NCBI RefSeq assembly: GCF_011386835.1
Contig: NC_088791.1
Span: 191,084,001-191,148,000, forward strand
DNA from: Chrysemys picta bellii
Taxonomy: Eukaryota
Direction of reading: 5' to 3'
DNA: 64,000 bases
Shown: positions 2,605-57,805 of the stretch, piece by piece
How positions within the stretch are numbered: the first letter of the stretch is position 1
How the letters are laid out: each line of letters begins with the position of its first letter
The notes under the pieces: model-generated
Seen by the model: the letters and a program-made list of their open reading frames with translations, nothing else
Databases searched by the model: none
What the model was told of the DNA's origin: nothing
Program-made: the position numbers and the translations under genes

Positions 2605-2606
<2 letters not shown>

Positions 2607-2643: not shown

Positions 2644-2646
<3 letters not shown>

Positions 2647-5481: not shown

Positions 5482-5631
<150 letters not shown>

Positions 5632-6293: not shown

Positions 6294-7161
6294 CTAATAA
6301 AATATTAGAAATTAATGTATTTTTTCCTAGTGTCATACAAGTGCTTTTTTTTTTTTTGCATTGCTTTTAAGAGCCATGCAGCAGTATTCCAGGTATCTTT
6401 CACACCTGAATTTCAACAGACAAAGCAAATATCTCATTATCTATCTAGAAAGAGCATGCAGCAGTACTGACACTATGGCTCCGATCCCACAACATTTACA
6501 CACATGTTTAACTCTACACATGCAAGTAGTCCCATTGACATAATGAAACTCCTCATCTGCATAACGTTAAGTATGTGTGTGAATGTTTGCAGGAAGGGGA
6601 GGTCAAGACAAGTTAAGACTGGAATGCGCACAGGACATTACTGACTGAATCACTGTCAAATAAAATCAACATAGCTATGTTGTGATACAAAGTTTACTTT
6701 TACAATGGAAGAAAGTCAGTTGACCAGAATATCAATCAAAAGAAAATAAAGTAAATCCCTTTGCAAATAACAGTTACCCGCCAAACAGAGAGACCAAAAC
6801 ATAAGAGACCTATGACAAAGGTCAACCATTCTAACTTAAATAAGAGAAAAGTTGATCTTTAACCATTTGGTACGGGGCGACAGGGATTTAATAACACTAA
6901 ATACCAGCACAAAATGCAATATGGCAGAAAATGCAGACTTCCACCTTCACAATCAAAATGTAATTCAGTAAGGATGCACCACTCTTTAGTGCAAGACAAT
7001 CAAGCCTGGTGAAACACAATCCCTTGTGTCAGACTGTCATCTCCCTAGGCTAGAAGCCCTCTCTCTCCAATCCTGTTTCCCAGGATAGAACAAATTACAC
7101 ACAGCCACCCACCCACTTTTAATATTAAACTCCACCAAAACAGCCTCCCAATATCATATTA

Positions 7162-7332
<171 letters not shown>

Positions 7333-7970
7333 CTAAAACTAGCACCACTGGAAATGGTGAATATAAACCCAGTTTTCAGGCTTATAAAACCTGATTGTAA
7401 AAGCAATTAACTCCACCCCCCTAGTAATATAAAACACACATTAGCATTCTAAGCACTTCTCACCCCCTGCTCCCCCCAAGAAATATCAACTTGTGCTGTA
7501 GAACCCTTATATACAAGTTATTCTGTAGGAACAGCAGAATGATACTGAGGAGGCACACAGATACGAAGAGCAACTGGAATTTCCATTGCAGAGATTACTC
7601 CCGAGGAAGGGGAGCATTACCTAATTCTTTTTCCTTCTTCCGTGATCACGAAAAACAAACTGACTTTGAAAATTACATAGCCACCATATGCTTCCATGCG
7701 TCGTAGTGTCTTCAAAGAGCTCCCCCTGCCAGTCTCTTTTGGGAATTAAGTGCTGTCAATCACCGTTTGGGCAACTGCAAATATTGCTCGTTCAGGACTG
7801 CTTACAAGAACCGTTTATAATTCCATTCAGAGGCAGGCAGGGTACCCTTATAACAATAAGCAAAAAGAGCCAAACAACATATGTATCTCAGACCCTACAA
7901 AATTGTACTCACCCATGACGGATTATTTTTGACAACCAAGTAAAATACAATTTTTGCTTTTTCAGACACT

Positions 7971-8103
7971 CATAGACTCGAAGGTCAGAAGGAACCATCA
8001 TGATCATCTAGTCTGACCTTCTGCACTTTTCAGGCCACAGAACCTCACTCACCCACTCATGTAATAGACCCCTAACCTCTGGCTGAGTTACTGAAGTCCT
8101 CAA
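7971..8103 (-). mobile_element. CR1 LINE 3' end fragment
   Basis: TCATAGACT..AAGGTCAGAAGGAACCATCATGATCATCTAGTCTGACC resembles the reverse complement of a CR1 tail. Confidence 0.6.
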
Positions 8104-8768
8104 AGAACTTTCAAGTAAGTTTTCATGTTCTTGTACTGAAATCCTCTGATGTCCTTTTGGCTAATTAAGAGTATCACCTTGTACATACTTAACTTGAGAG
8201 AACCACCAGTCTAAGTTCCCCTTAGTTCAAGACCAGGTCACTATAAAGACGATGACCATCTAATATCTGCAGTTCTGTTTTCTTTAGGCAGGGCATGATA
8301 CTGATGTGGCCCCCGCTATGACTGGTCAATAAAGCAGTGATGGCTATTTTTCATATATATCATATTACCCTCCAAAGCTCAAGTGTGCCTCATCTAATAT
8401 AAGCCTATTTTAGCCCTGAGCGAGAAACCCAAGACCATACTTGGACTTCCTATATTGCAGCATTAATGCAAAGTTACCATGCCATCTTTTTAGAAACTGG
8501 GCCTGAATGTTCATTTATACTGCAGCCTGTTTACACCAGTCTGCCAGTGTTAAGGGGCCTTAAAGTGGGTGGAACTGAAATATATGTCCATTTCAGGCTT
8601 CTCTAGACTGCCAGGATTGTGTAAAGGGGCCTTAGTATTAACAAAAATTCAGGCCCTGATACTGGTTACTTGTACAGTATCTTCTAAGTAACCTGGTATA
8701 GTAGGTCCCTAAATGTTCCTTCGGTAAGCTGTAACCCAAACTCTTAAGAGGACGAGAAGCATACTTAC

Positions 8769-8837
8769 AGAAACCTCTTCTCCTACAAGAAGTTCTTCAA
8801 CAACAACAGTTTCCCCAGCTGCTCCAAAAGTCTTATC
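8769..8837 (-). CDS. GART: GART exon 6 (DKTFGAAGETVVVEELLVGEEVS)
   Basis: Translation match; cag| and |gtaagt; 69 nt. Confidence 0.97.
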
Positions 8838-9343
8838 CTGCATTAAAAATCATCTTTAATTTCTTTTGTCTCCATTTGTCATTTCAAAGAACAATCAAAC
8901 CTTTGTAATCCTCCCAAACCAGCAAGGAAAAATACATCTGGAACCCATCTGTTCTGTTTCCATCCTTCATATCAGACATGTTGGCAATGTTGAATGCTTT
9001 CCCCCCCCTCACTTTTCATAATACAGACATGCTCTTGAAAGTTTATAAACTCAACATTGATACCACTTGGGTTATTGACTGGCAATTCCTCATACCGTTT
9101 TTGTTTTAAGTTTTGAACCAATATTATTTCAGACTGAAACAATGATTCTCAGCCTTGAAGAGCAGAAAATCCACTTTGTTAACACTTACAGAGGAATGCG
9201 AGAACATCGCTCCACGGAAATGTTTGCATGCTGACCATATATTAATGCAGTGCACTGCCAAGGCAACTTTGTGGCTCTCTGAGGCCATATCTACACAATC
9301 ACTTTTGTCGGTATAACTTATGTTGCTCAGGGGTGTGAAAAAA

Positions 9344-11018
9344 TTTAGCAATTATCTTCGAAAACACATGGAAGATGGGAAAGATGCCAGAGGACTGGCA
9401 GAGGGGAAATATAGAGCCAATCCGTAAAACGGGGAATAAGGTCAACAAAGGGGAATTACAGTCCAGTCAGTTTAACTTCAGTACCCGGAAAGATAATGGA
9501 GCAAATAATCAAGAAATCAATTTGCAAACACCTAGAAGATAATAAGGTGATAAGTAACAGCCAACATGGATTTGTCAAGAACAAATCATATCAAACCAAC
9601 CTAATAGCTTTCTTTGACAGGGTAACAAGCCTGGACAGGGGGAAGCAGTAGATGTGGTATATCTTGAATTTAGTCAGGCTTTTGATACTGTCTTGCATGA
9701 CCTTCTCATAAACAAACTAAGGAAATTCACCTTATAATAGCTCCATCTAGGTTGTATGTATAACTAGTTGGAAAACCGTCCCAGAGAATAATTATCAGTT
9801 GTTCACAGTCAAGCTGGAAGGGAATATCAAGTGGGGTCCCTCAGGGATCAGTCCTGGGTCCGGTTCTGTACAGTATCTTCATCAATGATTAAGATAGTGG
9901 CATAGAGAGAGTACACTTATAAAGTTTGTGGACGATACCAAGCAGGGAGGGTTGCAAGTAATTTGGAGAACAGGATTAAAATTAAAAATGACCTGGACAA
10001 ACTGGAGAAATGGTCTGAAGAAAACAGCATGAAATTCAATAGAACAAATGCAAAGTACTCCACTTAGGAAAGCACAGTCAACTGCACAAATTCAAAATGG
10101 GAAAGGACTGCCTAGGAAGGAGCACTGCGGAAAGGGATGGGAGGGTTATAGTGGATCACAAGCTAAATGAGTCAACAGTGTAACTCTGTTGCAAAAAAAG
10201 TAAACATCATTCTAGGATGCATTAGCAGGAGTGTGGTAAGCAAGACACTAGAAGTAATTCTTCCCTTCTACTCTGTACTGATTAGGCCTCAGCTGGAATA
10301 TTGTGTCCAATTCTGGGTGCCACATTTCAGGAAAGATGTGGACAAATTAGAGAAAGTCCAAAGGAGAGCAACAAAAATGATTAAAGGTCTAGAAAACGTG
10401 ACCTATGAGGAAAAATTGAAAAAAAAAATGAGTTTGTTTAGTTTGGAGAAGAGCAGACGGGGGAGTGAGGGGGGACAAGAGAATAGTTTTCAAGTACATA
10501 AAAGGTTGTTGCAAGGAGGAAGGTGAAAAATTGATCTCATTAACCTCTGAGGACAGGATAAGCAGGAATGGGCTTAAATTATAAATAAATTAATGGAGAT
10601 ATCCTATCTCCTAGAACTGGAAGGGACCTTGATAGGTCATTGGGTCCAGCCCCCTGCCTTCACTAGCAGGACCAAGTACTGATTTTGCCCCAGATCCCCA
10701 AGTGGCCCCCTCAAGGATTGAACTCACAGCCCTGGGTTTAGCAGGCCAATGCTCAAACCACTGAGCTATCCCTCCCCCCCAGTTGCAGCAAGGGAGGTTT
10801 AAGTTGGACATTAGGAAGAACTTCCTAACTGTCAGGTAGTTAAGCAGTGGAACAAATTGCCTAGGGAGGTTGTGGAATCTCTGTCATTGGAGGTTTTTTT
10901 AAGAACAGGTTAGACAAACGCCTGTCAGGAATGGTTTAAGGACTATTACTAGTCTGCCTTGAGTGCACGGGACTGGACTAGATGACCTCTTGAGGTCCCT
11001 TCCAGTCTATGAGTCTAT
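9344..11018 (+). mobile_element. 5'-truncated CR1 LINE (RT region to 3' tail), decayed, interrupted by a SINE
   Basis: ORF fragment SQQCNSVAKKVNIILGCISRSVVSK...LIRPQLEYCVQFWVPHFRKDVDKLEKVQRRATKMIKGLE is CR1 ORF2. Ends GAGGTCCCTTCCAGTCTATGAGTCTAT. Confidence 0.9.
10582..10780 (-). mobile_element. tRNA-derived SINE with CR1-like tail (tortoise Pol III/SINE type)
   Basis: Minus strand GGGAGGGATAGCTCAGTGGTTTGAGCATTGGCC (A box) ... GTGAGTTCAATCCTT (B box), then a CR1-type tail GGACC..ATGACCTATCAAGGTCCCTTCCAGTTCTAGGAGATAGG. Confidence 0.88.
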
Positions 11019-11370
11019 ACGCTTAGCTTTACAGGTATTCCATTGGGATTAAAGCACACATGTACAGTTAAGCATATGCTCAAGTGCTTTGGTGAATGAG
11101 CACCTATAGCTGAAGCTGCATGTTCAGTTTCAAGGACCTTTTTCTTTAGTTTGTCTTAGCCAGTTTAATCATAGGAGTACTGTTAGAGTCCTGCCAGTTC
11201 TGTAATAGCAGGGACACAAAAAGGATGGAGAAAAAGCAAATCCAAAAGGAAGCAAGTATGAAAATGGGATCTTATTTATGCCCACAGAGATTGTGCCTGG
11301 AAAGAGAATGCTTCCTGAAGGAATCAAATATTGTATTCATTCATACACACCCAAATAGTGTGAGTGCAGC

Positions 11371-27845: not shown

Positions 27846-28573
27846 AATAATAATAGACTATAAATAAGATCTCCACAGCAATTGATTTGCTGTCAAATTA
27901 GTGTAGGTTGGCTTTCCAGAAACTAACACATGCAGCTTGTCTTGAGGACATATACTATGTATAGAATTTACTTTGGGTAAATTAATATTTGAAAATTTAA
28001 CTTTGTCACTCAAGAATACAGAATCATCACATAACTGTATGCCATCACCCAATTTGCTATTTTCTCTCACAGACCAAATAAGGAAAGGGGTAAGGCTGCA
28101 TCAGTGGAACACCAAAATATGTGTGTGAGAAAGTGCTTTGGGGATAATATCCCCAAATATCTGCCACAAGGGCAACTGGATTTAGTGCAGCTGATCCGTT
28201 TGTAGTGATGATCTAGTAAAACATTTCCCAAACCAGAGACTGTCTGGCTAGCGCAGCTAAGGCAGAGGCTGACTTTCAGGTTGGGGTTTATTTATTTATC
28301 TGAATTTAGTTTCTGGATTCCGGTCTCCCCGACAAACCTACAGACGCAGGTCAGATCCAGACTTCCTAAGAGCTGGTTTTCCCTCACATGGTCTCTCTGT
28401 AAACACGCTCTGCCCTGTGCGTGACTTTACACAGCTGCTCTCTGTGTGTGCAGCCATCAGCGCACGGAGCCGCGCCGCACCCCCGGCTGCAGCGGTCACC
28501 CGCCGTCTTTCTCTCGCGCACGGGAGGCGCAGGGGAAGTGCGGGGCCTGGTGCGGCGGCGCTGCCTGAGCCCC

Positions 28574-28674
28574 ATGGCGGAGCTCCCACGGGCTGCGGCG
28601 GGCTCGGGCCCGGCCGGAGGCGGCAGGCTCGGGCTCCAGGCGATCACGGCCCCGGATCCCCGGCCTGCGCGGAG
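28574..28674 (+). CDS. Candidate alternative upstream coding first exon of SON (MAELPRAAAGSGPAGGGRLGLQAITAPDPRPARR)
   Basis: CCCATGG start context and consensus donor AG|GTGAGT. Phase 2, so in frame with SON exon 2. No homology support. Confidence 0.3.
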
Positions 28675-29193
28675 GTGAGTGGTGCCGGGCGTGCGGGTCT
28701 CCCGCGGGCGGGCAACCGAGCCCCCGCCGCGCGCCTACAGGCGGACGCGATCCCGGGGCAGCCCCCGCCCGGGCCGAGCCCCATGTACTGCCCCGGTGGG
28801 GGAGGGGAGAGGGATCTACGTTTCATCCCGTGGGTGGAGGGGCAGCGCGGCCCCGCGCCCACCGGCGCCCTGTGTGGATGGGGGGGGGGCGGGAACTCGG
28901 TGCAGTAACATGGCTGCCGGGGCCCATCCTCCTCCCCGGGCACCTGCGGGGGGAGGGGAACGTCCACGGGCCTTCCCCCCCCCCAAGAGAGGCTGCGCTC
29001 TATGGTTCCCTGTGGGGGTAGAGCGGTTGATTGACGTCCCGTCATGCCGCTGGTTCCACAGAGGGCGACCAATGGCGGGAGGGCATAAAGGGAACGCGTC
29101 GGGGGCTGGCCCGTTGCTTCTTGCGCTGGTGCATTGTGGGGTAGTGGAGGACCCGCGTTGCGGATGGAGGGGGAGTCGAGCCGTGGGGCTGTC

Positions 29194-29288
29194 ATGGCGA
29201 CTAACATCGAGCAGATCTTTCGGTCCTTTGTGGTCAGCAAGTTCCGGGAGATCCAGGAGGAGCAGGAACAACAGCAGCAGCTGGGCGG
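29194..29288 (+). CDS. SON: SON exon 1 (MATNIEQIFRSFVVSKFREIQEEQEQQQQLG)
   Basis: Diagnostic SON N-terminus MATNIEQIFRSFVVSKFREIQ; donor GG|gtaacg; phase 2. Confidence 0.97.
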
Positions 29289-29990
29289 GTAACGAGCCGG
29301 CTCGGGGCCGCGGGGAGGCGGAGTGGGACGGGAGCCTAGTGGGAGCGGAGTCGGGGTGGGGGCGGGGAGCGGTGTCCAGGGGGCAGTTGCGGGACGGGGA
29401 CAGTGGGAGGGAGGGTGGGCGCGGGGAGGGATAACTCGGGACAGTTAGGTGGGGGAGGGGCGGCCGTTGCGGGTCACTCGAACATACAGGGCCTGGCCCA
29501 GCGCTCAGCGGCGACATCCGGTTATGGTGCAACCAGGCCGCTGCCCCTCCGGGCGGTCAGTTCTTCAGTGAAAATAACAAGTTTGGATGGGCTAATTTCG
29601 CAATGCTTTGATGCTCCTCAGAACACGTGCACGCTGGTGTGTTTTCAGTCTGAAAAAGAGTGCTTGGTGGGGTGGGTTTTACTCTTTTTTTGGCGAGGGG
29701 AGGGAAGAGGGAAACGAAATTTCTGTGTTGCGAAAAGGCCTGGGATGAAACAGTGAGAAAATATTTTCTTCCCTTTGGCATAGTTCTAGTGACTAACAAA
29801 GTATTTTGTCTAAGAACGCAGTAAGTAAAACAAACTGAAAGATTAATATTTCACTAAAGTGCAAGGCCTCTTCAGGAGGCTAAAGTATTCTTTAGAAGGT
29901 TTGGCTATAAGAAATGTGAATACATTACCTTTAAAAAATAAAAATAAAGCTCGAAATTACTTGAATTTTGTTAATATTTTTCTCGGTTAG

Positions 29991-30157
29991 TGGAAAGGTA
30001 GAAGGCCAGCAGAATGGTGAAACAGTCCCAGCTGAGCAAGCAAACACTTCAGATGACACAGTTACGGGTGCTGGGAGTCTTCAGAATGATCAGATAGTTC
30101 AGAAAATAGAGGAAGTACTGTCTGGGGCCCTTGATACAGAGCTACAGTGTAAATCAG
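29991..30157 (+). CDS. SON: SON exon 2 (GKVEGQQNGE...QIVQKIEEVLSGALDTELQCKS)
   Basis: IVQKIEEVLSG.LDTEL motif; tag| and G|gtaaat; 167 nt. Confidence 0.96.
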
Positions 30158-33004: not shown

Positions 33005-36000
33005 GTGTGGAGGAAGATTCAGTGAAAAATAGCTCTTCATCTACAAAAAGAGGCCCTACTGACGAAGTAGAAGATGAAATTCCAAGAAAAAAATCAAAAA
33101 AGAACAAGAAACACAAAAGCAAGAAGAAGAAGAAGAAAAAGAAGAAGAAAAGGAAGAAAGAAAAAAAACATAAAAAGCAGCCAAAGGAATCAAAATTAAG
33201 TGCACAGTATGGAGAGCATGCAGATTTACAACCTGCTTCTCACTCAAAGACAGAAAAATTGGGCTCAAAGTTGATCACACAGCATGGAGGGCATGCAGAT
33301 TCAGATCTTGCTGGTCAAATGCAGCCAGAAGAATTGGGCACAAAATTGAGTGCAGAGTACATGGGGCATTCAATTAAAAGACTCACACCTCATTTGCTAT
33401 CAGATTCTGAATCATCTGTGGAAAAACTTGGGAGTGAAAAAACAAACTTGGCCTTGACTGATATACACAGTTCAGAAACCAGCAAATTGGATACCCAGGA
33501 AGAAAATACTAGTACAATGAAAATTCAAGAGCAAGCTAAAGTAAAATTATTGGTGAATAAGACTCATGAAAGTATATATCATATAGCTATTAATATGAAT
33601 GCAAAGGGTGGACCTTTACCAGTTAAAGACACTGAAAATGGTACTGTGTCTACCAACAGAACTGGAGTTGCTGGTAAATCTGAAATTGAAAAGGATTTGG
33701 AAGCTATTCCAGCCTCTGAGATAACAGAAGAACTAAAAGATTCAGAAGCTACTCTGAAATCGATGGGCATGGTGGAGGTGAAAGAATTAGAAACAACCTT
33801 AGAATCTGAGGCCATGGCAAAGATTAAATTTTCAGAAGCAATTCTAAAATCTCTGACTATGGCGACTTCAGAGGGTTTGGATGCCCCTCTAGAATCTGTG
33901 GCCATAGCAGAGGTGAAAGCAACTCTAGAATCTGTGGCTGTGACAAATGATTTGGTAGAAACTCCAACATCTGTAGTTGTAATGGAGACGAAAGCTTTGG
34001 AAGGAACCGCAGAATCTGTTGTCATGACAGATATGAAAGGTTTGGAAGCCACTCTAGAAACTGTGGGTGTGTCAGAAGCAAAAAGTTTGGAAGGAGGGCT
34101 TGAATTTGTGACTGTGCCAGATGATTTGGTAGCAACTTCAAAATCTGTGGCCAAGGCAGAGGTGAATGGTTTGGAAGCAATACCAAAATCTGCATCTATG
34201 GGGGAGGTGAAAGGTTCAGAACCTGTTGTGAATGCAAAAGATTTGGAAGCAGCTCTAAAACCTGCAATGGAGAGGAAAGATTTGGAAATAACTCCAGAAT
34301 CTCTACACATGGAGGAGGTGAAAGGTGCAGAAGGAGCCCTAGAATCTGTGGCTATGGCAATAGATTTGGAAGGAACCCTCAAACCTGCTCCTCTGGCAGA
34401 GGCAAAAGATTCAGATGCACCATCACTGTCTCCGCAAATAGAAGATATGAAAGAGTCAAAAGGATTCCTAGAATCTGTGGCCATGGCAAAAGGTCCAGAA
34501 ACAATCCTAGACCCTGCAGGGGTGACAGAGGTGAAAGATTTGCAAGAAATTCCAGAATCGCTGCACATACAGGATATGGAAGCTTTGGAAGCATCCTTAG
34601 AACCTGTGGTCATGACAACAGGTCTGGAAGTGGCTCTAGAACATGTGGCTGTGGCGAAAGGTGCAACTCCACTTTCTATGCAAATGGAAAAAGTGAAAGA
34701 TTTGGAAGGAGCCCTAGTAGAATCTGTGGCAGTGGCAAAAGGTTCAGAAGCAGCCCTAGAACATGTTGTCTTGGCAGAGAATAAAGGTGTGGAACCAACT
34801 TCACTATCTCTGCAAATGGAAGATGTGAAAGATTCGGAAGGAGCTCTAGAATCTGTTGCCATGGAAGAAGGCTCAGAAGCAACCCAAGAACCAGTGACAG
34901 AGGCAAAAGACTTGGAAGCAATCTTAGAATCTGTCTCGGAGGTGAAAGGTTCAGAACCAGCACCTCTGTCTCTGCAGATGGAAGATGTGAAAGGTTCAGA
35001 AGGAGGTGTAAAATCTTTGGCCATGGCAAAAGGTTCAAAACCAACCCTAAAAGCTGTGGCTGTGGGGGAGGGAAGAGGTTCAGAAGCAACTCTGCTGTCT
35101 CTGGAAATGGAGAATGTGAAAGATTCAGAAGGAGCCCTAGAATCTGAGGCCGCGGCAAAAGATTTAGAGGCAACTCTAGAACCGGTGGCAGAGGTGAAAG
35201 ATTCGGAAGCAATGCTTCGGTCTCTGCAAATGGAAGATGTGAAAGAATTAGAAGGAACCCTAGAATCTGTCATGGCGGCAAAAAGTTCGGAAGAAACCCT
35301 AGGGCCTGTGGCCAGGGTGGAGGAGAAAAGTGCAGAAACACCTCCACTATCTCTGCAAATAGAAGATGTGACAGAATCAGAAGGAGTCCTAGAATCTATG
35401 TCTGTGGTGAAGTTGAAGGCTTTGGAAGCAGCCTTTGAGTCCGTAGTCATGGTAGAGGTGAAGGATTTAAATAAACTTGTACAAGCTGAGTCTGAGGTCA
35501 CAACTCAGTTTAAAGATTTGGAAGCAATTCCCAAATTTCTGTGCATGGAGGGAGATTTGGTAATAACTCCAGAATCTGAGACAACATCAGAAGTGAAAAA
35601 CATGGAAATAGTTGGACAATCTGAATCACTGGCAGAAGTGAAAGATTTGGAAACCACCCCAGAATCTGAAGCAGTGGCAGAGTCAAAGGATTCAGAAACA
35701 ACTACAGAAACTCAGGTGCTGATGGAAGTGAAAGATTTGAAAACAATTCCACAATCCCAAGTCATGACAGAAGTAAGTGACTTGAAAATATCTCCACATA
35801 CTGAGGTGGAGGTGATGAAAGATTTTGAAACAGCTACAAAGTCTGATGCCACTATAATAGAGATGGAAGATTCTGAATCAACTCTGGAATCTAGGGCAGT
35901 AGTGGAAGTGAAAGATCCGGAAGCCACACCGGAATCTGAGGCAATGACTGGCATAAAATATTCTAAAAAATGTCTAGAATCTGAGGCCAAGGCAGAGTTG

Positions 36001-39000
36001 AAACATTCAGAAGCTACCCCAGAATCTTTACACCTTACAGACTTGAAAGATTCTGGAAAAACTCCGGGACCTGAGATGATGATGCAAATTAAAGATTCAA
36101 AAACAATTCAAAAATCGGAGCCCGTCACTCTGGTGAAAGATTCTGAAGCTAGTCGAGAATTGCTGCATATAGTGGTAAAAGATTTGCAATCAACTCTAGA
36201 ACCTGAGACTGTGACAGTGGTGAAAGATTTGAAGGAAACTCTAGAGTGTGAGATGGTGGTGGCGAAAGATTTGGAAACAACCCTAAAATCTGAAGTAGTC
36301 ATGGATGTAAAGCATTCTAAGGCTGCTCCAGAATCTTTGTATAAAGCAAAGGTAAAGGATTCAGAAGCAGTTCCAGAATCTCTCTGCTCATCGAAGGTGA
36401 AAGTTCCAGAACCTGCTCTAGAATTGGAGGCGGCAGCAAAAGTGAAAGATTTGAAAGAAACCCTAGAATCTAAGGTCATGGTAGATGTGAAAGATTTGGA
36501 AGCTGCTTCAGAATCTGTGGTCAGGATGAAGGTAAAAGATTTGGAAGAAATTCCAGAACATTGGCAGCCAGTGGATGTGAAAATTTTGGAAGCATCTCTG
36601 GAATCTGAGGAAACAGAAGAAGTAAAATATTCAGAAGCAACTCCAGAAGCGCAGGTGTTGACAGAGACGAAAGATTTGGAAGAAACTCTGGAAACTCTGT
36701 ACACTGCAGAGGTGGAGGAGTTGGAAAAAATTACAGAATCTATGCCAATGGTAGAGGTGAAAGAATCTGAGGCTGTGACGGATCTGAAATTCTCAGCAAC
36801 AACTCTAAAATCTGATAAAACAGTGGAGGTGAAAATTTTGGAAGATACACCAGAATCTTTGACAGTGGAAAAGATACAAAATTCAAAAGCATATGTAGAA
36901 TCTCTGCACACTGAGGAAATGAAAGATTTGGAAGCAGATCTAGAAGCTGAGGCTGCAACAGATCTGAAGGATTTGGAAGAAACTTCAGGCACTGTGCAGG
37001 TGAAATATTCAGAAGCAGTTTTGAAATCTGTGGGCATAGCAGAGAGAAAACATTTGGAAACAACTGTAGAAAGTCCTAATGCAGTGCTAGATTTGGAAAC
37101 AGTTTTAGAATCTCAGCACATTGTGGATCTGAAATTTCCGGAAACTCCTGAGATTCCTGAGTTAACAGTGGAGGTGAAAGATTCTGAAGCAGCTCTAGAA
37201 TCTGAGGCTATTACAGAGGTATTGCGACCTATTCCAGAGTCTGTGGCCACGGTGGAGGTGAAAGATTTGAAAGCAGTTCCAGATTCTCTTCACACAGTAA
37301 ACATGAATAACTTGGAAGCAACTCCAGAATTGGCGGCAGCTGCAAAGGTGAAAGACTTGGAAGCAGCTCCAGAATCTGTGGTGGCAATAGCAGAGGTGAA
37401 GGATTTACAAGCAGCTCCAGAATCGGCAGCAGTGGCGAAAGATTTGGAAGCAGCTCCAGAATATGTGGTGATGCTGGCAGAGGTGAAAGATTCAGAAGTA
37501 GTTCCAGATTCTCTGCATACCATAGATGTGAAAGATTCTAAAACAATTCCAGAATCTGTGGTAGTGGTTTCAGAGGCGAAGGATTCAGAAGCCGCTCCAG
37601 AATCTGTGGCGGCAGTGGCAGAGTTGAAATACTCAGAAACATGTCCAGAATCTGTGGTGGTGACTGCAGAAATGAAAGATTTAGAAGCAGCTCTGAAATC
37701 TGTGATGGTGGCAGAGATGAAGGATTTGAGAGCAGCTCCAAAATCTTTGGCTGTAGAGGTGACAGATTTGGAACCAGCGCCAGATATTCTGCGTCCTGTA
37801 GATGTGAAAGATTCTGGATCAACTACAGAATCTGTGATAGCAGCTGAAGAGGTGACAGATTTGGAAGCCGCTCCAGATTTTCTGCACACTGAAGATGTGA
37901 AAGATTCTGAAAGAACTCCACTATCTGTGGTAGTGGCTGCAGAGGTGAAAGATTCAGAAGCTGCTCCAGAATCTGTTGTGACAGTGGCAGAGTTGAAATA
38001 CTCAGAAACAAGTCCGGAATCTGTGGTGGCTACTGCAGAAATGAAAGATTTAGAAGCCGTTCTGGAATCTGTGGCAGTGGCAGAGGTGAAGGATTTGCAG
38101 GCTGCTTCAGATGCTGTGGTGGCGGTGACAGAGGTGAAAGATTTGAAAGCATCTCCAGAATCTTTGGCAGCGGTGGCAGCAGAAGTGACAGATTTGGAAG
38201 CAGCTCCGGATTTTCTGTGTACTGTAGATGTGAAAGATTCTGGAACAACTGCAGAATCTGTGATAGCAGCTGAAGAGGTGACAGATTTGGAAGCAGCTCC
38301 AGATTTTCTGCACACTGAAGATGTGAAAGATTCTGAAAGAACTCCACAATCTGTGGTAGTGGCTGCAGAGGTGAAAGATTCAGAAGCTGCTCCAGAATCT
38401 GTTGTGACAGTGGCAGAGGTGAAATACTCAGAAACAAGTCCGGAATCTGTGGTGGCTACTGCAGAAATGAAAGATTTAGAAGCCGTTCTGGAATCTGTGG
38501 CAATGGCAGAGGTGAAGGATTTGCAGGCTGCTACAGATGCTGTAGTGGTGGTGGCAGAGGTGAAAGATTTGAAAGCTGTTCCAGTTTCTCTGGTGGCGGT
38601 GGCAGACGTAGAAGAGTCAGAAGGCACTCCAAAATCTGTGGGGGTGGCTGCAGAGATGAAAGATTTGGAAGCAGCTCCAGAATCTGTGGTGACCATGGCA
38701 GAGGTGAAAAATTTGGAAGCACCTCCAGATTCTTGGTATACAGTGTACGTTAAAGATCCAGAAACAACTCAAGAATCTGTGGCAGTGACAGCAGAGGTGA
38801 AGGATTCAGAAGCAACTCCAGCATTTGGGGCGATGGCGGCAGAGGCGAAAAATTCAGAAGCAGCTTCAGAATCTGTGGCAGTAGCGGCAGAGGTGAAGGA
38901 TTTGCAAGCTGCTCCAGATTCTCTGGTGGCAGTGGCAGAGGTAGAAGATTCAGAAGCAGCTAGTGTTTCTCTGCATACTTTAGGTGTGAATGATTCAGAA

Positions 39001-42000
39001 GCAGCTCCAGAATCTGTGGTGGCTATGGCAGAGGTGAAAAATTTGGAAACATCTCCAGATTCTCTGTATACACTGTATGTTAAAGATTCAGAAACTACTC
39101 AAGAATCTGTGACAGTGACAGCAGAGGTGAATGATTCGGAAGCAACTCCAGCATTTGGGCCAGTGGCGGAAGAGGTGAAAAATTTGGGAGTGGCTCCAGT
39201 ATCGGTGGTGGCTGTGGCAGCGGTGGAAGTTTCGGGAGTGGCTCCGGAATTGGTGGTGGTTGTGGCAGAGGCAAAAGATTCCGAAGCGGCTCCAGGATCT
39301 GTGGCAGAAGTGAAGAATGATGATCTTTTTAAAAAAAAGAAAGCACATGAAAAAAGTAACAAGAGTAGTGATAAACATAAACAAGATGCAAAGAAATTAA
39401 AAAGGAGTAAATCTAAATCTCTTTCACGATCCAGGAAGCGGAAAAAAAAGTCCAGGTCACGTTCTGTTTCTAAACATTTGAAATATAAAAGAGCAAGGTC
39501 TAGGAGCAGAAACTACTCAGATTCCAGAAAGAACCATTCCACATCTTATGACAAGTCTAGATCCAGATCTGTGGAAAAAAGAGGGGGCAAAGACTCTTCC
39601 TGGAGGTCCAGACGCAGGCGCTCCAGGTCCTCTGATGGTCTCAAGTCAAGATCCAGATCCATTGATAAAAGGGAAGGCAAAGACTCTTCCTGGAGGTCTA
39701 GACGCAGGCGCTCCAGGTCCTCTGATCGTCTCAAGTCTAAATCCAGATCTGTTGAAAAAAGAGAGGGCAAAGATTCTTCACGGAGGTCTAGACGCAGACG
39801 CTCCAGGTCCTCTGATCGCCTCAAGTCTAGATCCCGATCTGTTGAAAAAAGAGAGCGCAAAGATTCTTCACGGAGGTCTAGACGCAGACGCTCCAAGTCC
39901 TTGGATCGTCTCAAGTCTAGATCCAGATCTGTTGAGAAAAAAGGGCACAAAGACTCTTCCTGGAGGTCCAGACGCAGACGCTCCAAGTCCTCTGATCGTC
40001 TCAAGTCTAGATCCAGATCTGTTGAAAAAAGAGAGCGCAAAGAGTCTTCACGGAGGTCTAGGCGCAGACGCTCCAAATCCTCTGATCGTTTCAAGTCCAG
40101 ATCCAGATCCAGATCTTTTGAAAAAAGAGGTGGCAAAGAATCTTCCTGGTGGTCCAGACGCAGACGCTCCAAGTCCTCTGATCGTTTCAAGTCCAGATCC
40201 AGATCCAGATCGGTTGAAAAAAGAGGTGGCAAAGAATCTTCCTGGAGGTCTAGACGCAGACGCTCCAAATCCTCTGATCGTCTCAAATCAAAATCCAGAT
40301 CCAGATCTGTTGAAAAAAGAGGTGGCAAAGAATCTTCCTGGAGGTCTAGACGCAGACGCTCCAAGTCCTCTGATCGTCTCAAATCAAAATCCAGATCCAG
40401 ATCTGTTGAAAAAAGAGGTGGCAAAGAATCTTCCTGGAGGTCCAGACGCAGACGCTCGAAATCCTCTGATCGTCTCAAGTCAAGATCGAGATCTGTTGAA
40501 AAAAGAGGGGGCAGGGACTCTTCATGGCGGTCTAAACGTAGACGTTCCAAGTCCTCGGATCGTCTCAAATCTAGATCCAAATCTGTTGAAAAAAGAGGGG
40601 GCAGAGACTCTTCACGGAGGTCTAAACGTAGACGCTCCAAATCCACCGATCATCGCAAATCTAGATCCAAATCTGTTGAAAAAATAGGTAGTAAAGAGTC
40701 TTCACGGAAGTCGAAACGTAGACGTTCCAAGTCCTCTGATCGTCTCAAATCTAGATCCAAATCTATTGAAAAACTAGGAAGCAAAGCGTCTTCATGGAGG
40801 TCCAGACGCAGATGCTCGAAATCTTTTGATGGTCTAAAGTCTAGATCTAGATCCAAATCTGTTGGAAAAAGACAGAGCAAGGAGTCTTCACAGAGATCTA
40901 GAAGTAAACACTCCAAGTCTTTTGAACATCACAAATCTAGATCCAAATCTGTTGAAAGAATAGAGGTACAGGAACCTTCACGGAGGTCTCGAAGTAGCCA
41001 CTCCAAGTCTTCTGAGCCTCACAAGTCCAGATCCAAATCTGTTGAAGAAATAGAGGTACAGGAACCTTCACAGAGATCTCGAAGTAGCCGCTCCAAGTCT
41101 TCTGAATGTAACAAATCTAGATCCAAATCTGTTGAAGAAATAGAGGCTCAGGAGCCTTCACTGAGGTCTCGAAATAGCCACTCCAAGTCTTCTGAATGTC
41201 ATATGTATAGATCCAAATCTGTTGACGAAATAGTGGTTCAGGAGCCTTCACAGAGGTTTCGAAGTAGCCGCTCCAAGTCCTTGGAACATCAACAATCTAG
41301 ATCCAAATCTGTTGAAGAAATAGAGGGCAAAGAATTGTCACAGAGGTCTCAAAGTAACCGCTTCAAGTTTTCTGAATGTCACGAGTCCAGATCAAAATCT
41401 GTTGAAGAAATAATGGTTCAAGAGCCCGCACAGAGGTCTCGAAGTAGCCGCTCCAAGTCTTCTGAGCCTCACAAGTCCAGATCCACATCTGTTGAAGAAA
41501 TAGAGGCTCAGGAGCCTTCACTGAGGTCTCGAAGTAGCCACTCCAAGTCTTCTGAACGTTGCACGTCTAGATCCAAATCAGTTGAAGAAATAGAGGTGCA
41601 GGAGCCTTTACAGAGGTCTCGAAGTAGCCGCTCCAAATCTTCTGAACATCTCCAGTCTAGATCCAAATCAGTTGAAGAAATAGAGGTGCAGGAGCCTTTA
41701 CAGAGGTCTCAAAGCAGCCGCTCCAAGTCTTCTGAACGTGTCACGTCTAAATCCAAATCTGTTGAAGAAATAGAAGCTCAGGAGCCTGCAGAGAGGTCTC
41801 AAAGGAGCCGCTCTGAGTCTTTGGAACGTCAAATGTCTAGATCCAAATCTGTTGAAAAAGTAGAATGCAAAGATTCTTCACAGAGGTCTCGAAGTAGCCG
41901 CTCCAAGTCTTCTGAACGTGTCACGTCTAAATCCAAATCTGTTGAAGAAATAGAAGCTCAGGAGCCTGCAGAGAGGTCTCAAAGGAGCCGCGCTGAGTCT

Positions 42001-45000
42001 TTGGAACGTCAAATGTCTAGATCCAAATCTGTTGAAAAAGTAGAATGCAAAGATTCTTCACAGAGGTCTCGAAGTAGCCGCTCCAAGTCTTCTGAACGTG
42101 TCACGTCTAAATCCAAATCTGTTGAAGAAATAGAAGCTCAGGAGCCTGCAGAGAGGTCTCAAAGGAGCCCCTCTGAGTCTTTGGAACGTCAAATGTCTAG
42201 ATCCAAATCTGTTGAAAAAGTAGAATGCAAAGATTCTTCACAGAGGTCTCGAAGTAGCCGCTCCAAGTCTTCTGAACGTCACACATCCAGATCCAAATCT
42301 GTTGAAGAAATAGAGGTTGAGGAGCCTTCACAGAGGTCTCGAAGGAGCCGCTCCAAGTCTTCTGAACGTGTCACGTCTAAATCCAAATCTGTTGAAGAAA
42401 TAGAAGCTCAGGAGCCTGCAGAGAAGTCTCGAAGCAGCCGCTCCGAGTCTTCTGAATGTCTCACATCTAGATCCAAATCTGTTGAAGAAATAGAGGTTGA
42501 GGAGCCTTCACAGAGGTCTCGAAGTAGCCGCTCCAAATCTTCTGAACGTCACACATCCAGATCCAATTCTGTTGAAGAAATAGAGGTTGAGGAGCCTTCA
42601 CAGAGGTCTCGAAGGAGCCGCTCCAAGTCTTCTGAACGTCACAAGTCCAGATCCAAATCTGATGAAGAAATGGAGGTTCAGGAGCTTTCACTTAGGTCTC
42701 GAAGTAGCCGCTCCAAGTCTTCTGAACGTGTCACGTCTAAATCCAAATCTGTTGAAGAAATAGAAGCTCAGGAGCCTGCAGAGAGGTCTCAAAGCAGCCG
42801 CTCTGAGTCTTTGGAACGTCAAATGTCTAGATCCAAATCTGTTGAAAAAGTAGAATGCAAAGATTCTTCACAGAGGTCTCGAAGTAGCCGCTCCAAATCT
42901 TCTGAACGTCACACATCCAGATCCAAATCTGTTGAAGAAATAGAGGTTGTGGAGCCTTCACCGAGGTCTCGAAGTAGCCGCTCCAAGTCTTCTGAACGTG
43001 TCAAGTCCAGATCCAAATCTGTTGAAGAAATAGAGGTTCAGGAGCTTTCACAGAGGTCTCGAAGTAGCCGCTCCAAGTCTTCTGAACGTGTCAAGTCCAG
43101 ATCCAAATCTGATGAAGAAATGGAGGTTCAGGAGGTTTCACAGAGGTCTCGAAGTAGCCGCTCCAAATCTTCTGACGGTCACAAGTCCAGATCCAAATCT
43201 GTTGAAGAAATAGAGGTTGCGGAGCCTTCACAGAGGTCTCGAAGTAGCCGCTCCAAGTCTTCTGAACGTCACAAGTCCAGATCCAAATCTGATGAAGAAA
43301 TGGAGGTTCAGGAGCTTTCACAGAGGTCTCAAAGTAGCCGCTCCAAATCTTCTGAACATCGCATGTCTAGATCCACATCTGTTGAAGAAATAGAGGTTGA
43401 GGAGCCTTCACAGAGGTCTCGAAGCAGCCGCCCGGAGTTCTTGGAACGTCAAAAGTCTAGATCCAAATCTGTTGAAAAAGTAGAATGCAAAGATTCTTCA
43501 CAGAGGTCTCGAAGTAGCCGCTCCAAATCTTCTGAACGTCACACATCCAGATCCAAATCTGTTGAAGAAATAGAGGTTGTGGAGCCTTCACCGAGGTCTC
43601 GAAGTAGCCGCTCCAAGTCTTCTGAACGTGTCAAGTCCAGATCCAAATCTGTTGAAGAAGTAGAGGTTGCGGAGCCTTCACCGAGGTCTCGAAGTAGCCG
43701 CTCCAAGTCTTCTGAACGTGTCACGTCTAAATCCAAATCTGTTGAAGAAATAGAAGCTCAGGAGCCTGCAGCGAGGTCTCAAAGCAGCCGCTCTGAGTCT
43801 TTGGAACGTCAAATGTCTAGATCCAAATCTGTTGAAAAAGTAGAATGCAAAGATTCTTCACAGAGGTCTCGAAGCAGCCGCCCGGAGTCCTTGGAACGTC
43901 ACAAGTCCAGATCCAAATCTGATGAAGAAATGGAGGTTCAGGAGCTTTCACTTAGGTCTCGAAGTAGCCGCTCCAAGTCTTCTGAACGTGTCACGTCTAA
44001 ATCCAAATCTGTTGAAGAAATAGAAGCTCAGGAGCCTGTAGAGAGGTCTCAAAGCAGCTGCTCTGAGTCTTTGGAACGTCAAATGTCTAGATCCAAATCT
44101 GTTGAAAAAATAGAGGGCAAAGATTCTTCACCGAGGTCTCGAAGTAGCCGCTCCAAAACTTCTGACAGTCACAAGTCCAGATCCAAATCTGTTGAAGAAG
44201 TAGAGGTTGCGGAGCCTTCACAGAGGTCTCGAAGTAGCCGCTCCAAGTCTTCTGAACGTGACAAGTCCAGATCCAAGTCTGATGAAGAAATGGAGGTTCA
44301 GGAGCTTTCACAGAGGTCTCGAAGTAGCCGCTCCAAATCTTCTGAACATCGCATGTCTAGATCCACATCTGTTGAAGAAATAGAGGTTCAGCAACTTTCA
44401 CAGAGGTCTCGAAGCAGCCGCCCGGAGTCCTTGGAACGTCAAAAGTCTAGATCCAAATCTGTTGAAAAAATAGAGGGCAAAGATTCTTCACCGAGGTCTC
44501 GAAGTAGCCGCTCCAAAACTTCTGACAGTCACAAGTCCAGATCCAAATCTGTTGAAGAAGTAGAGGTTGCGGAGCCTTCACCGAGGTCTCGAAGTAGCCG
44601 CTCCAAGTCTTCTGAACGTGTCAAGTCGAGATCCAAATCTGTTGAAGAAATAGAGGTTGCAGAGCCTTCACAGAGGTCTCGAAGTAGCCGCTCCAAGTCT
44701 TCTGAACGTCACAAGTCCAGATCCAACTCTGTTGAAGAAATAGAGGTTCAGGAGCCTTTACAGAGGTCTCGAAGTAGCCGCTCCAAGTCTTCTGAACGTG
44801 TCAAGTCCAGATCCAAATCTGTTGAAGAAATAGAAGTTGCGGAGCCTTCACAGAGGTCTCGAAGTAGCCGCTCCAAGTCTCCTGAACTTCAAAAGTCCAG
44901 ATCCAAATCTGTTGAAAAAATAAAGGGCAAAGATTCTTCGCAGAGGTCTCGGAGTAGCTGCTCCAAATCTCCTGAACTTCAGAAGTCTAGATCCAAATCT

Positions 45001-45733
45001 GTTGAAAAAATAAAAGGCAAAGATTCTTCACAGAGGTCTCGGAGTAGCCGCTCCAAGTCTCCTGAACTTCAAAAGTCTAGATCGAAATCTGTTGAAAAAA
45101 CAAAGGGCAAAGCGTCTTCACACAGGTCTAGAAGAAAACGCTCCAAATCTTCTGAACGTCACAAGTCTAGGTCCAAATCAGTTGAAAAAGTAGAGGGCAA
45201 AGAGTCTTCACAGAGGTCTAGAAGTAAGCGTTCTAAATCCTCTGAACGCAAACCACAAAAACATGATAGTGAATCGCGGTCTAGACGAAATCGGTCTCGG
45301 TCAGTAACACGTAAAAGACTGTCAAAATCTAAATCTAATCATCGATCTCGGACACGCTCTCTATCACGTTCAAGACACAGAAGGAGGAGTCGGTCAAGAT
45401 CAGTGTCGAAAAGGAGACGGTCTTTATCAAGAGAGAGACACAAAAGATCTCAAAGGAATAGATCAAGGTCTGCTGATAGAAGAAGAAGAAGATCAAACTC
45501 AAGGGATCACCGAATAGTGCTCAGGTTACGGACCAGAAGTCGAACACCTATTCGACGAAAACGGTCTAGGTCAGTGGGAAGAAGACGAAGCTCTAGCAAA
45601 TCACCAGTTCGACTAAGACGATCAAGATCACCTGGGAGAAGAAGATGCTATAGCAGATCACCTGACCGTCAGAGAAGGTCCAGATCATCCGATAAGTTTT
45701 CAAGCAGATCACCTAAACGTCTTACAGACTTAG
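33005..45733 (+). CDS. SON: SON exon 3, giant 12,729-nt internal exon (poly-Lys tract, acidic repeat array, RS repeat array, terminal RS domain)
   Basis: Acceptor poly-T taag| and donor G|gtaagt. Stop-free 4,244-codon ORF, frame-compatible with exons 2 and 4. Starts with a SON-type Lys tract and ends SPVRLRRSR...RSPKRLTDL. Confidence 0.95.
33691..39318 (+). repeat. Degenerate coding tandem array, roughly 120 units of 13-16 aa, consensus about KD(L/S)EA(A/T)PES(V/L)xxxAEV
   Basis: GAGGTGAAAGAT(T/TT)..GAAGCA.CTCCAGAATCTGTG recurs every 39-48 nt. Unit count is estimated from span divided by mean unit length. Confidence 0.9.
39556..45252 (+). repeat. Coding tandem array of 63 units of 90 nt (30 aa; five units of 96 nt), RS/RSKS-rich
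   Basis: The anchor codon of SVE(E/K) falls at 39571, 39661 ... 45181, giving 57 intervals of 90 nt and 5 of 96 nt. Confidence 0.97.
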
Positions 45734-49809: not shown

Positions 49810-49973
49810 ACAAGGCCCAGCTACTTGAAATAGCCAAAGCTAATGCAGCTGCCATGTGTGCTAAGGCTGGTGTCCCCTTACCACCAAGCCTACTGCCTAT
49901 TATAGCTCCAGCAAAGAAGGAGGAGAAAGTTACTCAGAAGTCAGCAAGAGATACAATAAAGGAGCTCACTGAG
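49810..49973 (+). CDS. SON: SON exon 4 (DKAQLLEIAKANAAAMCAKAGVPLPPSL...TIKELTE)
   Basis: Diagnostic KAQLLEIAKANAAAMCAKAG; tag| and |gtaagg; 164 nt. Confidence 0.98.
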
Positions 49974-52059: not shown

Positions 52060-52200
52060 AAATGCAAGAAGATTGCACAAAGCACAGATGACGTGATCGT
52101 GAACAAGCCTCATGATTCTGATGAAGAGGAGGAAGAACGCCCTTTCTACAATCATCCTTTTAAACTCAATGAACCTAAACCCATTTTTTTCAACTTAAAT
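52060..52200 (+). CDS. SON: SON exon 5 (KCKKIAQSTDDVIVNKPHDSDEEEEERPFYNHPFKLNEPKPIFFNLN)
   Basis: Translation match; tag| and |gtaagt; 141 nt, phase 0. Confidence 0.97.
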
Positions 52201-57622: not shown

Positions 57623-57805
57623 ACCACTCCTATCGTAAAACCAGCACCAAAAAATCAGGTAACTTTGACAAAGGAGTTCCCTGTCTCATCTGGGTCTCAA
57701 CACAGGAAAAAGGAAGCTGACAGTGTCTATGGAGAATGGGTTCCAGTTGAGAAAAACAAAGAAGAAAGCAAAGATGATGTTTTCCCCAAACCAGCTCTTG
57801 CACAG
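57623..57805 (+). CDS. SON: SON exon 6 (TTPIVKPAPKNQVTLTKEFPVSSGSQHRKKEADSVYGEWVPVEKN...PALAQ)
   Basis: Diagnostic QVTLTKEFPVSSGSQHRKKEADSVYGEWVPVEK; aag| and |gtaggg; 183 nt. Confidence 0.97.

What the first reader, a model, noticed from the sequence alone, without database searches (positions are those of the whole stretch)
33005..45733. 12.7-kb internal SON exon, predicting a ~4,700-aa nuclear-speckle scaffold with block-segregated charge
Seen: exons 1-6 total 13,479 nt (4,493 codons), and exon 3 alone encodes 4,243 aa without a stop. The order is a poly-Lys patch, ~1,900 aa of Glu/Asp-rich repeats, ~1,900 aa of Arg/Ser/Lys repeats, then the conserved RS end. Flanking exons have near-human sizes. 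Established (recalled): human SON is 2,426 aa with a ~5.9-kb exon 3, SON and SRRM2 scaffold nuclear speckles, and SON length varies among vertebrates through its disordered region. Inference: this lineage doubled the protein with two oppositely charged arrays, forming a diblock polyampholyte that could self-associate or auto-inhibit and so alter speckle properties.
Basis: partly seen in the sequence, partly recalled or inferred. Interest (0 to 1): 0.8.

Follow-up and report, generated by a model that had tools for sequence, protein, structure and literature searches.

The report
Turtle SON gene's giant repeat exon
This is the real, expressed 12.7-kb exon 3 of a turtle's SON gene (a nuclear-speckle scaffold), but such giant repeat-built SON exons are shared with another turtle family and exceeded in crocodilians and frogs, so it is an ordinary member of a known, length-variable gene family.

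Summary
Window 33005-45733 (+) is one open exon of 12,729 nt with a polypyrimidine/AG acceptor and a GTAAGT donor.

It is SON. GART lies head-to-head upstream, G-patch and DSRM exons lie downstream, and the best hits are bird and squamate "protein SON". The closest library protein is a partial SON of the snapping turtle Chelydra (85% identity), so the window is from another turtle.

An RNA run has a contig ending exactly at the donor, at about 50 times the depth of the intron. It has even depth across the RS arrays and no skip joints.

- **Charge:** the acidic half has net charge -247. In the "basic" half, 1,320 of 2,141 aa are near-neutral mixed-charge units.
- **Not lineage-specific:** Chelydra has the same layout, with exon 3 at least 11.7 kb. 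Alligator and gharial exon 3 is about 15 kb or more. Frog SON reaches 5,460 aa here, and 5,561 aa is published.
- **Ancestral layout:** squamates already show an acidic-then-basic order.
- **Selection:** the 15 strongly basic units are conserved (dN/dS 0.24). The 44 mixed units are a young, fast-turning coding minisatellite.

The scan noted only this same stretch before, not other DNA.

The parts
5494..14754 (-). GART exons (GARS_A domain pieces), head-to-head neighbour of SON
   Evidence: PF01071 matches on the minus strand at G000:C1:191089494-191098754, which is window 5494-14754. GART is also called upstream on the opposite strand in the Chelydra and Alligator loci.
28000..29500 (.). GC-rich island between GART and SON, the likely shared promoter region
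   Evidence: GC is 0.63 at 28000-28999 and 0.54 at 29000-29999, against 0.33-0.46 around it. Promoter function is inferred.
29194..29288 (+). SON exon 1 coding part (starts MATNIEQIFRSF...)
   Evidence: ATG at 29194 and donor GG|GTAACG at 29288/29289. It is 98% identical to Chelydra.
29991..30157 (+). SON exon 2
   Evidence: AG acceptor at 29989-29990 and GTAAAT donor at 30158. It is 86% identical to chicken SON residues 11-68.
33005..45733 (+). SON exon 3, 12,729 nt, about 4,243 codons
   Evidence: Open frame and splice sites. An RNA contig ends exactly at 45733.
33088..33189 (+). Poly-Lys patch (71% K)
   Evidence: Composition. The patch is conserved in birds, Chelydra and crocodilians.
33691..39315 (+). 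Acidic array of 15-16-aa units (KDLEAAPESVV-type); 1,875 aa, net charge -247
   Evidence: TRF periods of 45/48/93/426 nt, composition and lag-15/16 autocorrelation. It is colinear with Chelydra at 84% aa identity, dN/dS 0.65.
39316..39567 (+). Lys-rich / RS junction
   Evidence: Net +28 over 84 aa. It is 57-62% identical to bird and squamate SON and 93% identical to Chelydra.
39568..40947 (+). Type A RS units 1-15 (30-32 aa, net +8 to +12 each)
   Evidence: Unit table. Between units pN/pS is 0.37. Against Chelydra, 460 codons align without an indel, dN/dS 0.24. Birds and squamates have 8-19 similar units.
40948..44907 (+). Type B units 16-59 (30 aa, SVEEIEVQEPSQRSRSSRSKSSERHKSRSK-type); near-neutral mixed-charge, Ser-rich
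   Evidence: Net -3 to +5 per unit and NCPR +0.057. pN/pS is 0.79, nearest-neighbour unit identity averages 96%, and several pairs are 100% identical. Covered by RNA contigs of run X1 without skip joints.
44908..45267 (+). Units 60-63, reverting to the basic type
   Evidence: Net +5 to +11 per unit.
45268..45733 (+). Conserved RS tail ending ...SPKRLTDL
   Evidence: It is 79-82% identical to bird SON over 165 aa. Net +61.
49810..49973 (+). SON exon 4
   Evidence: AG/GT sites and correct phase. It is 75% identical to chicken.
52060..52200 (+). SON exon 5
   Evidence: AG/GT sites and correct phase. It is 88% identical to chicken.
57623..57805 (+). SON exon 6; exons 7-12 lie beyond the window
   Evidence: AG/GT sites and a chicken match. 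Downstream exons at G000:C1:191153324-191169853 carry G-patch and DSRM.

Best explanation
This is exon 3 of the SON orthologue of a turtle. SON is the large Ser/Arg-rich protein that, together with SRRM2, forms the core of nuclear speckles. The exon encodes a low-complexity region of about 4,240 aa built from in-frame tandem arrays. In order these are a poly-Lys patch, an acidic array of 15-16-aa units, a Lys-rich junction, 15 strongly basic RS units, 44 mixed-charge RS/KS-plus-Glu units, and a conserved RS tail. G-patch and dsRNA-binding exons follow. The arrays grew by unit duplication, with unit lengths of 45/48 and 90 nt that keep the frame. The large size was already present in the common ancestor of this turtle and Chelydra. 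It is one point on a sauropsid series: squamates about 6-8 kb, birds about 8-10.5 kb, turtles about 12-13 kb, crocodilians about 15 kb. The conserved parts are the poly-K patch, the junction, the type A units and the RS tail; I infer that they carry the essential multivalent, phospho-tunable RS function. The acidic array and the type B array are weakly constrained spacer or valency modules whose length and charge drift between lineages. Shown here: gene identity, exon structure, transcription of the RS half, the comparative lengths and the selection pattern. Inferred: the speckle-scaffold role of each block.
For: Identity:
- The best hits are 'protein SON' of birds, squamates and frogs.
- G-patch (E 5e-17) and DSRM (E 4e-11) exons lie downstream on the same strand.
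- GART lies upstream on the opposite strand.

Turtle origin:
- The window is 85% identical to the Chelydra partial SON and 40% identical to gharial SON.

Expression:
- In run X1 a contig of depth 223 ends exactly at 45733, while the contig running into the intron has depth 4.6.
- Unique contigs across 39996-45733 have depth 121-223, and X1 shows no joints.
- The DNA run X12 reads straight through the donor.
- X1 holds 91% of the sampled words of 33005-42900.

Assembly:
- There are no N and no exact repeat longer than 250 nt.
- Independent runs under two organism labels hold 84-91% of the words.

Age and breadth:
- The arrays are colinear with Chelydra.
- Exon 3 is at least 11.7 kb in Chelydra, about 15.2 kb in alligator, and at least 15.4 kb plus a gap in gharial.
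- The exon-3-equivalent is 8.1-10.5 kb in birds and 6.2-8.1 kb in squamates.
- The published SON range is 610-5,561 aa.

Selection:
- Type A dN/dS is 0.24, the acidic array 0.65 and type B 0.69.

Function, from the literature:
- SON repeats are needed for speckle organisation.
- RS domains behave as phospho-tunable arginine mixed-charge domains whose net charge sets speckle cohesion.
Against: No protein-level evidence exists. RNA depth was measured only for 39800-45799, so inclusion of the acidic array in mature mRNA rests on word share alone. Logan contigs drop rare isoforms, so minor internally spliced forms are not excluded. Turtle-wide breadth therefore rests on one other species. Crocodilian lengths include assembly gaps and gap-induced frame changes. 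A single-sequence AlphaFold model of 301 aa of the acidic array gave a beta-meander with pLDDT 67, which does not fit a simple 'disordered spacer'. The five models ranged from 26 to 67, however, and repeats often give such models.
Confidence: 0.85

Rival explanations
1. One reading: a lineage-specific doubling created two oppositely charged arrays, so that SON acts as a diblock polyampholyte. It would self-associate or auto-inhibit and change the material properties of speckles in this lineage.
For: The acidic array carries net -247 and the second half net +344. Cumulative charge has a single minimum at aa 2107. Net charge of arginine mixed-charge domains does tune speckle cohesion in human cells.
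Against: The layout is not specific to this lineage. It is present in Chelydra, squamates show the acidic-then-basic order, and crocodilians and frogs have longer SON. In the 'basic' half, 1,320 of 2,141 aa have NCPR of only +0.057. The 410 serines in type B and 140 in type A are likely kinase targets, which would remove the positive charge (established for RS domains). The acidic and type B arrays evolve with dN/dS of 0.65-0.69, which suggests weak constraint rather than a tuned interaction.
Confidence: 0.1
2. The exon length is inflated by misassembly of tandem repeats, and the true exon is much shorter.
For: Type B has only 38% unique 31-mers, and several 90-nt units are identical. One DNA contig of run X12 fuses units 16 and 17, one unit fewer.
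Against: There is no exact repeat longer than 250 nt and there are no gaps. The units are diverged: 83% matches by TRF, and 95% of acidic-array 31-mers are unique. Independent DNA and RNA runs hold 84-91% of the words. An independent assembly of another turtle has the same arrays, colinear, with an even longer acidic half. The X12 fusion amounts to one unit in 63.
Confidence: 0.03
3. The arrays are genomic but are mostly spliced out as internal introns (exitrons), so the main protein is of mammalian size.
For: Very long exons are unusual. Only contigs, not raw reads, were available.
Against: In run X1 the depth across the RS arrays (121-205) is close to that of the unique 3' end (223) and about 30-50 times that of the intron, with no joints. 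The exon holds no GGTRAG and only three GTRAG sites. The frame is kept open over 12.7 kb here and in Chelydra, and type A shows dN/dS of 0.24, which fits translation.
Confidence: 0.04

Closest known systems
Human/mammalian SON (nuclear-speckle scaffold; ZTTK syndrome gene)
   Same: The gene neighbourhood is the same, with GART head-to-head. The exon plan is the same: small exons 1-2, one giant exon 3, then small exons. Both have a poly-Lys patch near the start of exon 3, an RS tail ending ...SPKRLTDL, and C-terminal G-patch and DSRM. Both carry tandem repeats unique to SON in exon 3.
   Different: The mammalian repeats (MDSQMLASST and SMMSSAYERS types) are replaced by a 15-16-aa acidic array and a 63-unit array of 30 aa. 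The predicted protein is about 4,730 aa. By recall, not checked here, human SON is about 2,426 aa.
Bird and crocodilian SON (chicken 3,724 aa model; alligator and gharial loci)
   Same: The order of blocks is the same: poly-K, a 15-17-aa array, a K-rich junction, about 10-19 basic 30-aa RS units, a second 30-aa array, then the RS tail. The VE(E/K)IE.QEP head motif is shared by the second array.
   Different: In archosaurs the second 30-aa array has lost its RS/KS half and is net acidic. In the turtle it keeps RS/KS and is near neutral. The gharial first array (17 aa, AVAKVSEAAPKPGPVAP-type) is neutral and Pro/Ala-rich rather than acidic. Crocodilian exon 3 is longer, about 15 kb.
Squamate SON (2,400-3,260 aa)
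   Same: An acidic, degenerate first half is followed by 8-16 type A-like 30-aa RS units and the RS tail.
   Different: No type B block was detected, the first half is shorter and barely periodic, and the exon-3-equivalent is 6.2-8.1 kb.
Arginine-enriched mixed-charge domains / RS domains of speckle proteins (Greig et al., bioRxiv 10.1101/771592)
   Same: Type B units interleave Arg/Lys with Glu and Ser, with a charged fraction of 0.41 and near-zero net charge. Type A and the tail are classic RS.
   Different: This is a resemblance in composition only. No condensation or localisation assay exists for these sequences. Type B has a sizeable Lys share (9% K against 15% R), and Lys was ineffective in that study.

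Membership tests
SON orthologue | C-terminal G-patch domain | tested here: met
   PF01585 E 5e-17 (62 bits, cut-off 22) on the exon at L001:1507-1656. It lies on the same strand, about 17.6 kb past the end of exon 3.
SON orthologue | C-terminal double-stranded RNA-binding motif | tested here: met
   PF14709 E 4e-11 and PF00035 E 1.4e-5 on L002:1507-1644. The second half of the motif is on L003.
SON orthologue | Giant exon 3 with a poly-Lys patch near its start and an RS tail ending SPKRLTDL | tested here: met
   The tail is 79-82% identical to bird SON, and the N-terminal 230 aa of the exon are about 50% identical.
SON orthologue | Conserved synteny: head-to-head with GART | tested here: met
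   GARS_A exons lie on the minus strand at window 5494-14754. The arrangement is the same in the Chelydra and Alligator loci.
SON orthologue | Best reciprocal similarity to annotated SON proteins | tested here: met
   All 101 significant hits are SON or SON-like models. The top hit of the exhaustive representative search is Chelydra SON. The reverse search was not run.
SON orthologue | Localisation to, and requirement for, nuclear speckles | not testable with these tools
   This needs imaging or knock-down in turtle cells.
Arginine mixed-charge domain (R-MCD) | Intermixed Arg and acidic residues with near-zero net charge over a long stretch | tested here: met
   Type B has a charged fraction of 0.41 and NCPR of +0.057 over 1,320 aa.
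Arginine mixed-charge domain (R-MCD) | Arg-dependent condensation and speckle incorporation | not testable with these tools
   This is an experimental property.
   The acidic block has NCPR -0.13 over 1,875 aa. The second half has NCPR +0.16 overall, but this is concentrated in about 820 aa, and 1,320 aa are near neutral. Phosphorylation state is unknown.

The most novel reading that the evidence does not exclude
Archelosaur SON offers a natural charge-swap series in one homologous 30-aa array. The array is RS/KS-retaining and near neutral in turtles, and acidified in birds and crocodilians. The first array also differs: acidic in turtles, neutral and Pro/Ala-rich in gharial. If these differences change speckle cohesion or SON's phospho-regulation, the turtle protein would be a useful natural variant for testing how block charge and valency of a scaffold set condensate properties. 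In addition, the type B array may be a copy-number-variable coding minisatellite within the species, and the Val-rich acidic array may be beta-prone rather than purely disordered.
Probability: 0.15. Interest if true: 0.5.

Novelty: new member of a known kind. Interest (0 to 1): 0.27.

Why it matters
SON and SRRM2 are the core scaffolds of nuclear speckles. Why their disordered regions vary so much in length is an open question, stated as such by Ilik et al. 2020. This window adds a well-resolved, expressed turtle example. With the Chelydra, crocodilian, bird and squamate loci, it shows which blocks are conserved: the poly-K patch, the junction, about 15 basic RS units and the RS tail. It also shows which blocks drift in length and even in charge sign: the first array and the second 30-aa array. 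That gives a concrete set of natural variants for domain-swap experiments. It does not reveal a new kind of protein or a lineage-specific innovation. A practical point follows: public models of turtle and crocodilian SON are fragmented, because gaps or frameshifts fall in these arrays.

Tried and rejected
- **Pfam on exon 3:** a scan of the whole exon 3 translation found no family, as expected for low-complexity sequence.
- **First word-indexed search:** it returned no turtle or crocodilian SON. Full-length models of near relatives seem absent or withheld. The exhaustive representative search found only fragments: Chelydra 908 aa, Chelonia 105 aa, gharial 1,469-1,638 aa and alligator 385 aa.
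- **Type B HMM:** it found no bird units at E < 0.01. Homology of the bird and crocodilian acidic block to type B rests on position, 30-aa periodicity and a shared head motif, so it is probable, not proven.
- **Splice-donor depletion inside the exon:** observed 2 GTAAG and 1 GTGAG against about 5.6 and 4.4 in synonymous-codon shuffles. This is a trend only, with 6-7% of shuffles as low, so I make no claim.
- **X12 'skips 278' joint:** re-reading shows a one-unit (90-nt) fusion of units 16 and 17 in a single contig. It could be an allele, a gene conversion or a graph artefact, and it is not evidence of misassembly.
- **AlphaFold on the acidic array:** the single-sequence model was a beta-meander (pLDDT 67, with the five models at 26-67). 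I treat it as unreliable for a repeat without an alignment, and dN/dS of 0.65 argues against a tightly folded domain. No fold search was run on it.
- **Turtle literature:** the one turtle paper that co-mentions SON and speckles does not discuss SON in its main text.
Full report
**1. The observation**

The + strand frame beginning at 33007 is open for 4,244 codons, up to a stop at 45739-45741. The two other + frames of 33005-45733 contain 275 and 328 stops. A T-run and AG precede 33005, and G|GTAAGT follows 45733. The exon is therefore 12,729 nt.

I rebuilt the gene model independently from chicken SON matches and the splice sites:

| Exon | Window coordinates |
|---|---|
| 1 (CDS, MATNIEQIFRSF...) | 29194-29288 |
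| 2 | 29991-30157 |
| 3 | 33005-45733 |
| 4 | 49810-49973 |
| 5 | 52060-52200 |
| 6 | 57623-57805 |

Six more exons lie 5-22 kb beyond the window on the same strand. They add about 240 aa, so the protein is about 4,730 aa.

**2. Identity**

- All 101 significant hits of exon 3 are SON models of birds, squamates and frogs.
- The downstream exons score G-patch (E 5e-17) and DSRM (E 4e-11).
- GART exons lie upstream on the opposite strand.
- In the exhaustive representative search, the closest protein is a partial SON of Chelydra serpentina (85% identity). Gharial SON is at 40%.
- Intron 2 is 89% identical to Chelydra at the nucleotide level.

The window therefore comes from a turtle of another family. 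The genome is 2.37 Gb.

**3. Anatomy**

Residue numbers count from the open frame starting at 33004.

| Block | Residues | Features |
|---|---|---|
| Poly-K patch | 29-62 | 71% K |
| Acidic array | 230-2104 | 15-16-aa units, 22% D+E, 13% V, 13% A, net -247 |
| K-rich junction | 2105-2188 | net +28 |
| Type A units 1-15 | 2189-2648 | net +8 to +12 each, +151 in all |
| Type B units 16-59 | 2649-3968 | net -3 to +5 each, NCPR +0.057, 31% Ser |
| Units 60-63 | 3969-4088 | reverting to basic |
| RS tail | 4089-4245 | net +61 |

Cumulative charge reaches -235 at aa 2107 and ends at +111. The charge is therefore block-segregated overall. However, 62% of the 'basic' half is a well-mixed, near-neutral polyampholyte.

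**4. Is it real and expressed?**

- The window has no N. The longest exact internal repeat is 200-250 nt, and 77% of the exon's 31-mers are unique.
- Twenty public runs hold the stretch or part of it, and fifteen hold at least half its words. The top fourteen, under two organism labels, hold 84-91% of the words.
- I laid 39800-45799 on four runs. Run X1 has a 686-nt contig of depth 223 that ends exactly at 45733. A separate contig of depth 4.6 starts 30 nt upstream of the donor and runs into the intron. This is the branch expected in a k = 31 graph of an RNA library.
- Run X12 reads through the donor at uniform depth, as DNA would.
- In X1 the unique contigs across the arrays have depth 121-205, all 30 bins are covered, and no joints were reported. 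The RS half is therefore present in most mature transcripts of that sample.
X1 holds 91% of the words of 33005-42900.
- One X12 contig fuses units 16 and 17, which is one unit fewer. This may be an allele or a graph artefact.

**5. Comparison**

Protein lengths of SON models in the library are shown below. The published range for SON is 610-5,561 aa (Ilik et al. 2020).

| Group | SON length (aa) | Exon-3-equivalent |
|---|---|---|
| Birds | 2,948-3,982 | 8.1-10.5 kb |
| Squamates | 2,394-3,259 | 6.2-8.1 kb |
| Frogs | 4,363-5,460 | not measured |

Genomic loci of relatives were fetched.

- **Chelydra:** exon 3 starts at L007:14369 and is open for 3,645 codons. It then has a frameshift and is still inside the RS array at the end of the locus, so it is at least 11.7 kb. 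Its acidic half is 675 nt longer than in the window.
- **Alligator:** exon 3 spans about 15.2 kb, including 396 N.
- **Gharial:** exon 3 holds at least 15.4 kb of sequence plus a 5-kb gap. Frame changes coincide with gaps. I did not fill any gap.

The block order is shared. Squamates have a degenerate acidic half, 8-16 type A-like units and the tail. Birds and crocodilians add a second 30-aa array at the position of type B. It has the same VE(E/K)IE.QEP head and lag-30 periodicity (0.27 in chicken, 0.43 in gharial), but it is acidified. The gharial first array is a neutral 17-aa Pro/Ala-rich repeat.

**6. Selection**

| Region, compared with Chelydra | Result |
|---|---|
| Type A | 460 codons aligned without an indel, 93.5% identity, dN/dS 0.24 |
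| Acidic array | 1,817 codons in 18 blocks, 84% identity, dN/dS 0.65 |
| Type B | 73.5% identity, dN/dS 0.69; partly non-orthologous alignment |

Within the window, pN/pS between units is 0.37 for type A and 0.79 for type B. Nearest-neighbour identity of type B units averages 96%, with several identical pairs.

The giant exon therefore predates the split of the two turtle lineages. Type A is under purifying selection with a fixed copy number. Type B is a young, turning-over coding minisatellite.

**7. Mechanism**

The scaffold role of SON and the need for its repeats in speckle organisation are established in human cells. RS domains act as phospho-tunable arginine mixed-charge domains whose net charge sets speckle cohesion.

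By inference, the poly-K patch, the junction, type A and the tail form the conserved functional core. The acidic and type B arrays supply length, valency and charge balance under weak constraint.

- the near-neutral type B block;
- the expected phosphorylation of about 550 serines in types A and B;
- the layout being ancestral rather than new.

A single-sequence AlphaFold model of the acidic array gave a beta-meander (pLDDT 67; models ranged 26-67). I regard it as an unreliable lead.

**8. Verdict**

The identification as SON exon 3 is confirmed. The claim of a lineage-specific doubling is not. This is a new, well-resolved member of a known, length-variable family. It has modest comparative interest: conserved versus drifting blocks, and a turtle-versus-archosaur difference in the charge of one homologous array.

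The scan's earlier notes concern this same stretch only.

Noticed in passing
window 33579-40646, minus strand: There are long antisense open frames inside exon 3: 640 aa at 33579-35501, 468 aa at 37290-38696, 366 aa at 39546-40646 and 309 aa at 36108-37037. They are most likely by-products of the purine-rich, repetitive codon usage of the sense strand, not genes.
   Followed up: no
window 49277-49650 (intron 3) and 53784-54160 (intron 5): A GC-rich element of about 375 nt is present in both introns at 87% identity in the same orientation. It is probably an interspersed repeat. It produces the spurious 150-205-aa open frames near 48947-49564.
   Followed up: partly
G000:C1:191010607-191010741 (+), about 73 kb upstream of the window: A second match to the GARS_A domain of GART (E 4.9e-12, two stops inside) lies on the opposite strand to the real GART exons. 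It may be a GART exon duplicate or a pseudogene fragment.
   Followed up: no
L007 (Chelydra serpentina) about 25281-25284; L008 (gharial) 25258-30257; L009 (alligator) 26462-28120: Public SON models of these species are fragmented. The models are 908 + 695 aa in Chelydra, 1,469-1,638 aa in gharial and 385 + 2,182 aa in alligator. A frameshift or assembly gaps fall inside the exon 3 arrays, so the annotated proteins greatly understate the true size.
   Followed up: partly
window 41011-41106: One DNA contig of run X12 joins unit 16 to unit 17 of the 30-aa array, a 90-nt skip with unit-17 letters at 40982. The run carries the same organism label as the best holders. This could be a one-unit copy-number allele, a gene conversion or a graph artefact.
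   Followed up: partly
window 37771-38673 (+): AlphaFold2 without an alignment folds 301 aa of the acidic array as 19 regular beta-strands at the 15-16-aa period (pLDDT 67, pTM 0.66). The five models disagree strongly, so it is likely a repeat artefact. The Val-rich ESVVAVAEVK segments may still have real beta propensity.
   Followed up: no
window 19420-19928: An earlier scan note reports a palindrome of about 250 bp in GART intron 2. I did not examine it.
   Followed up: no
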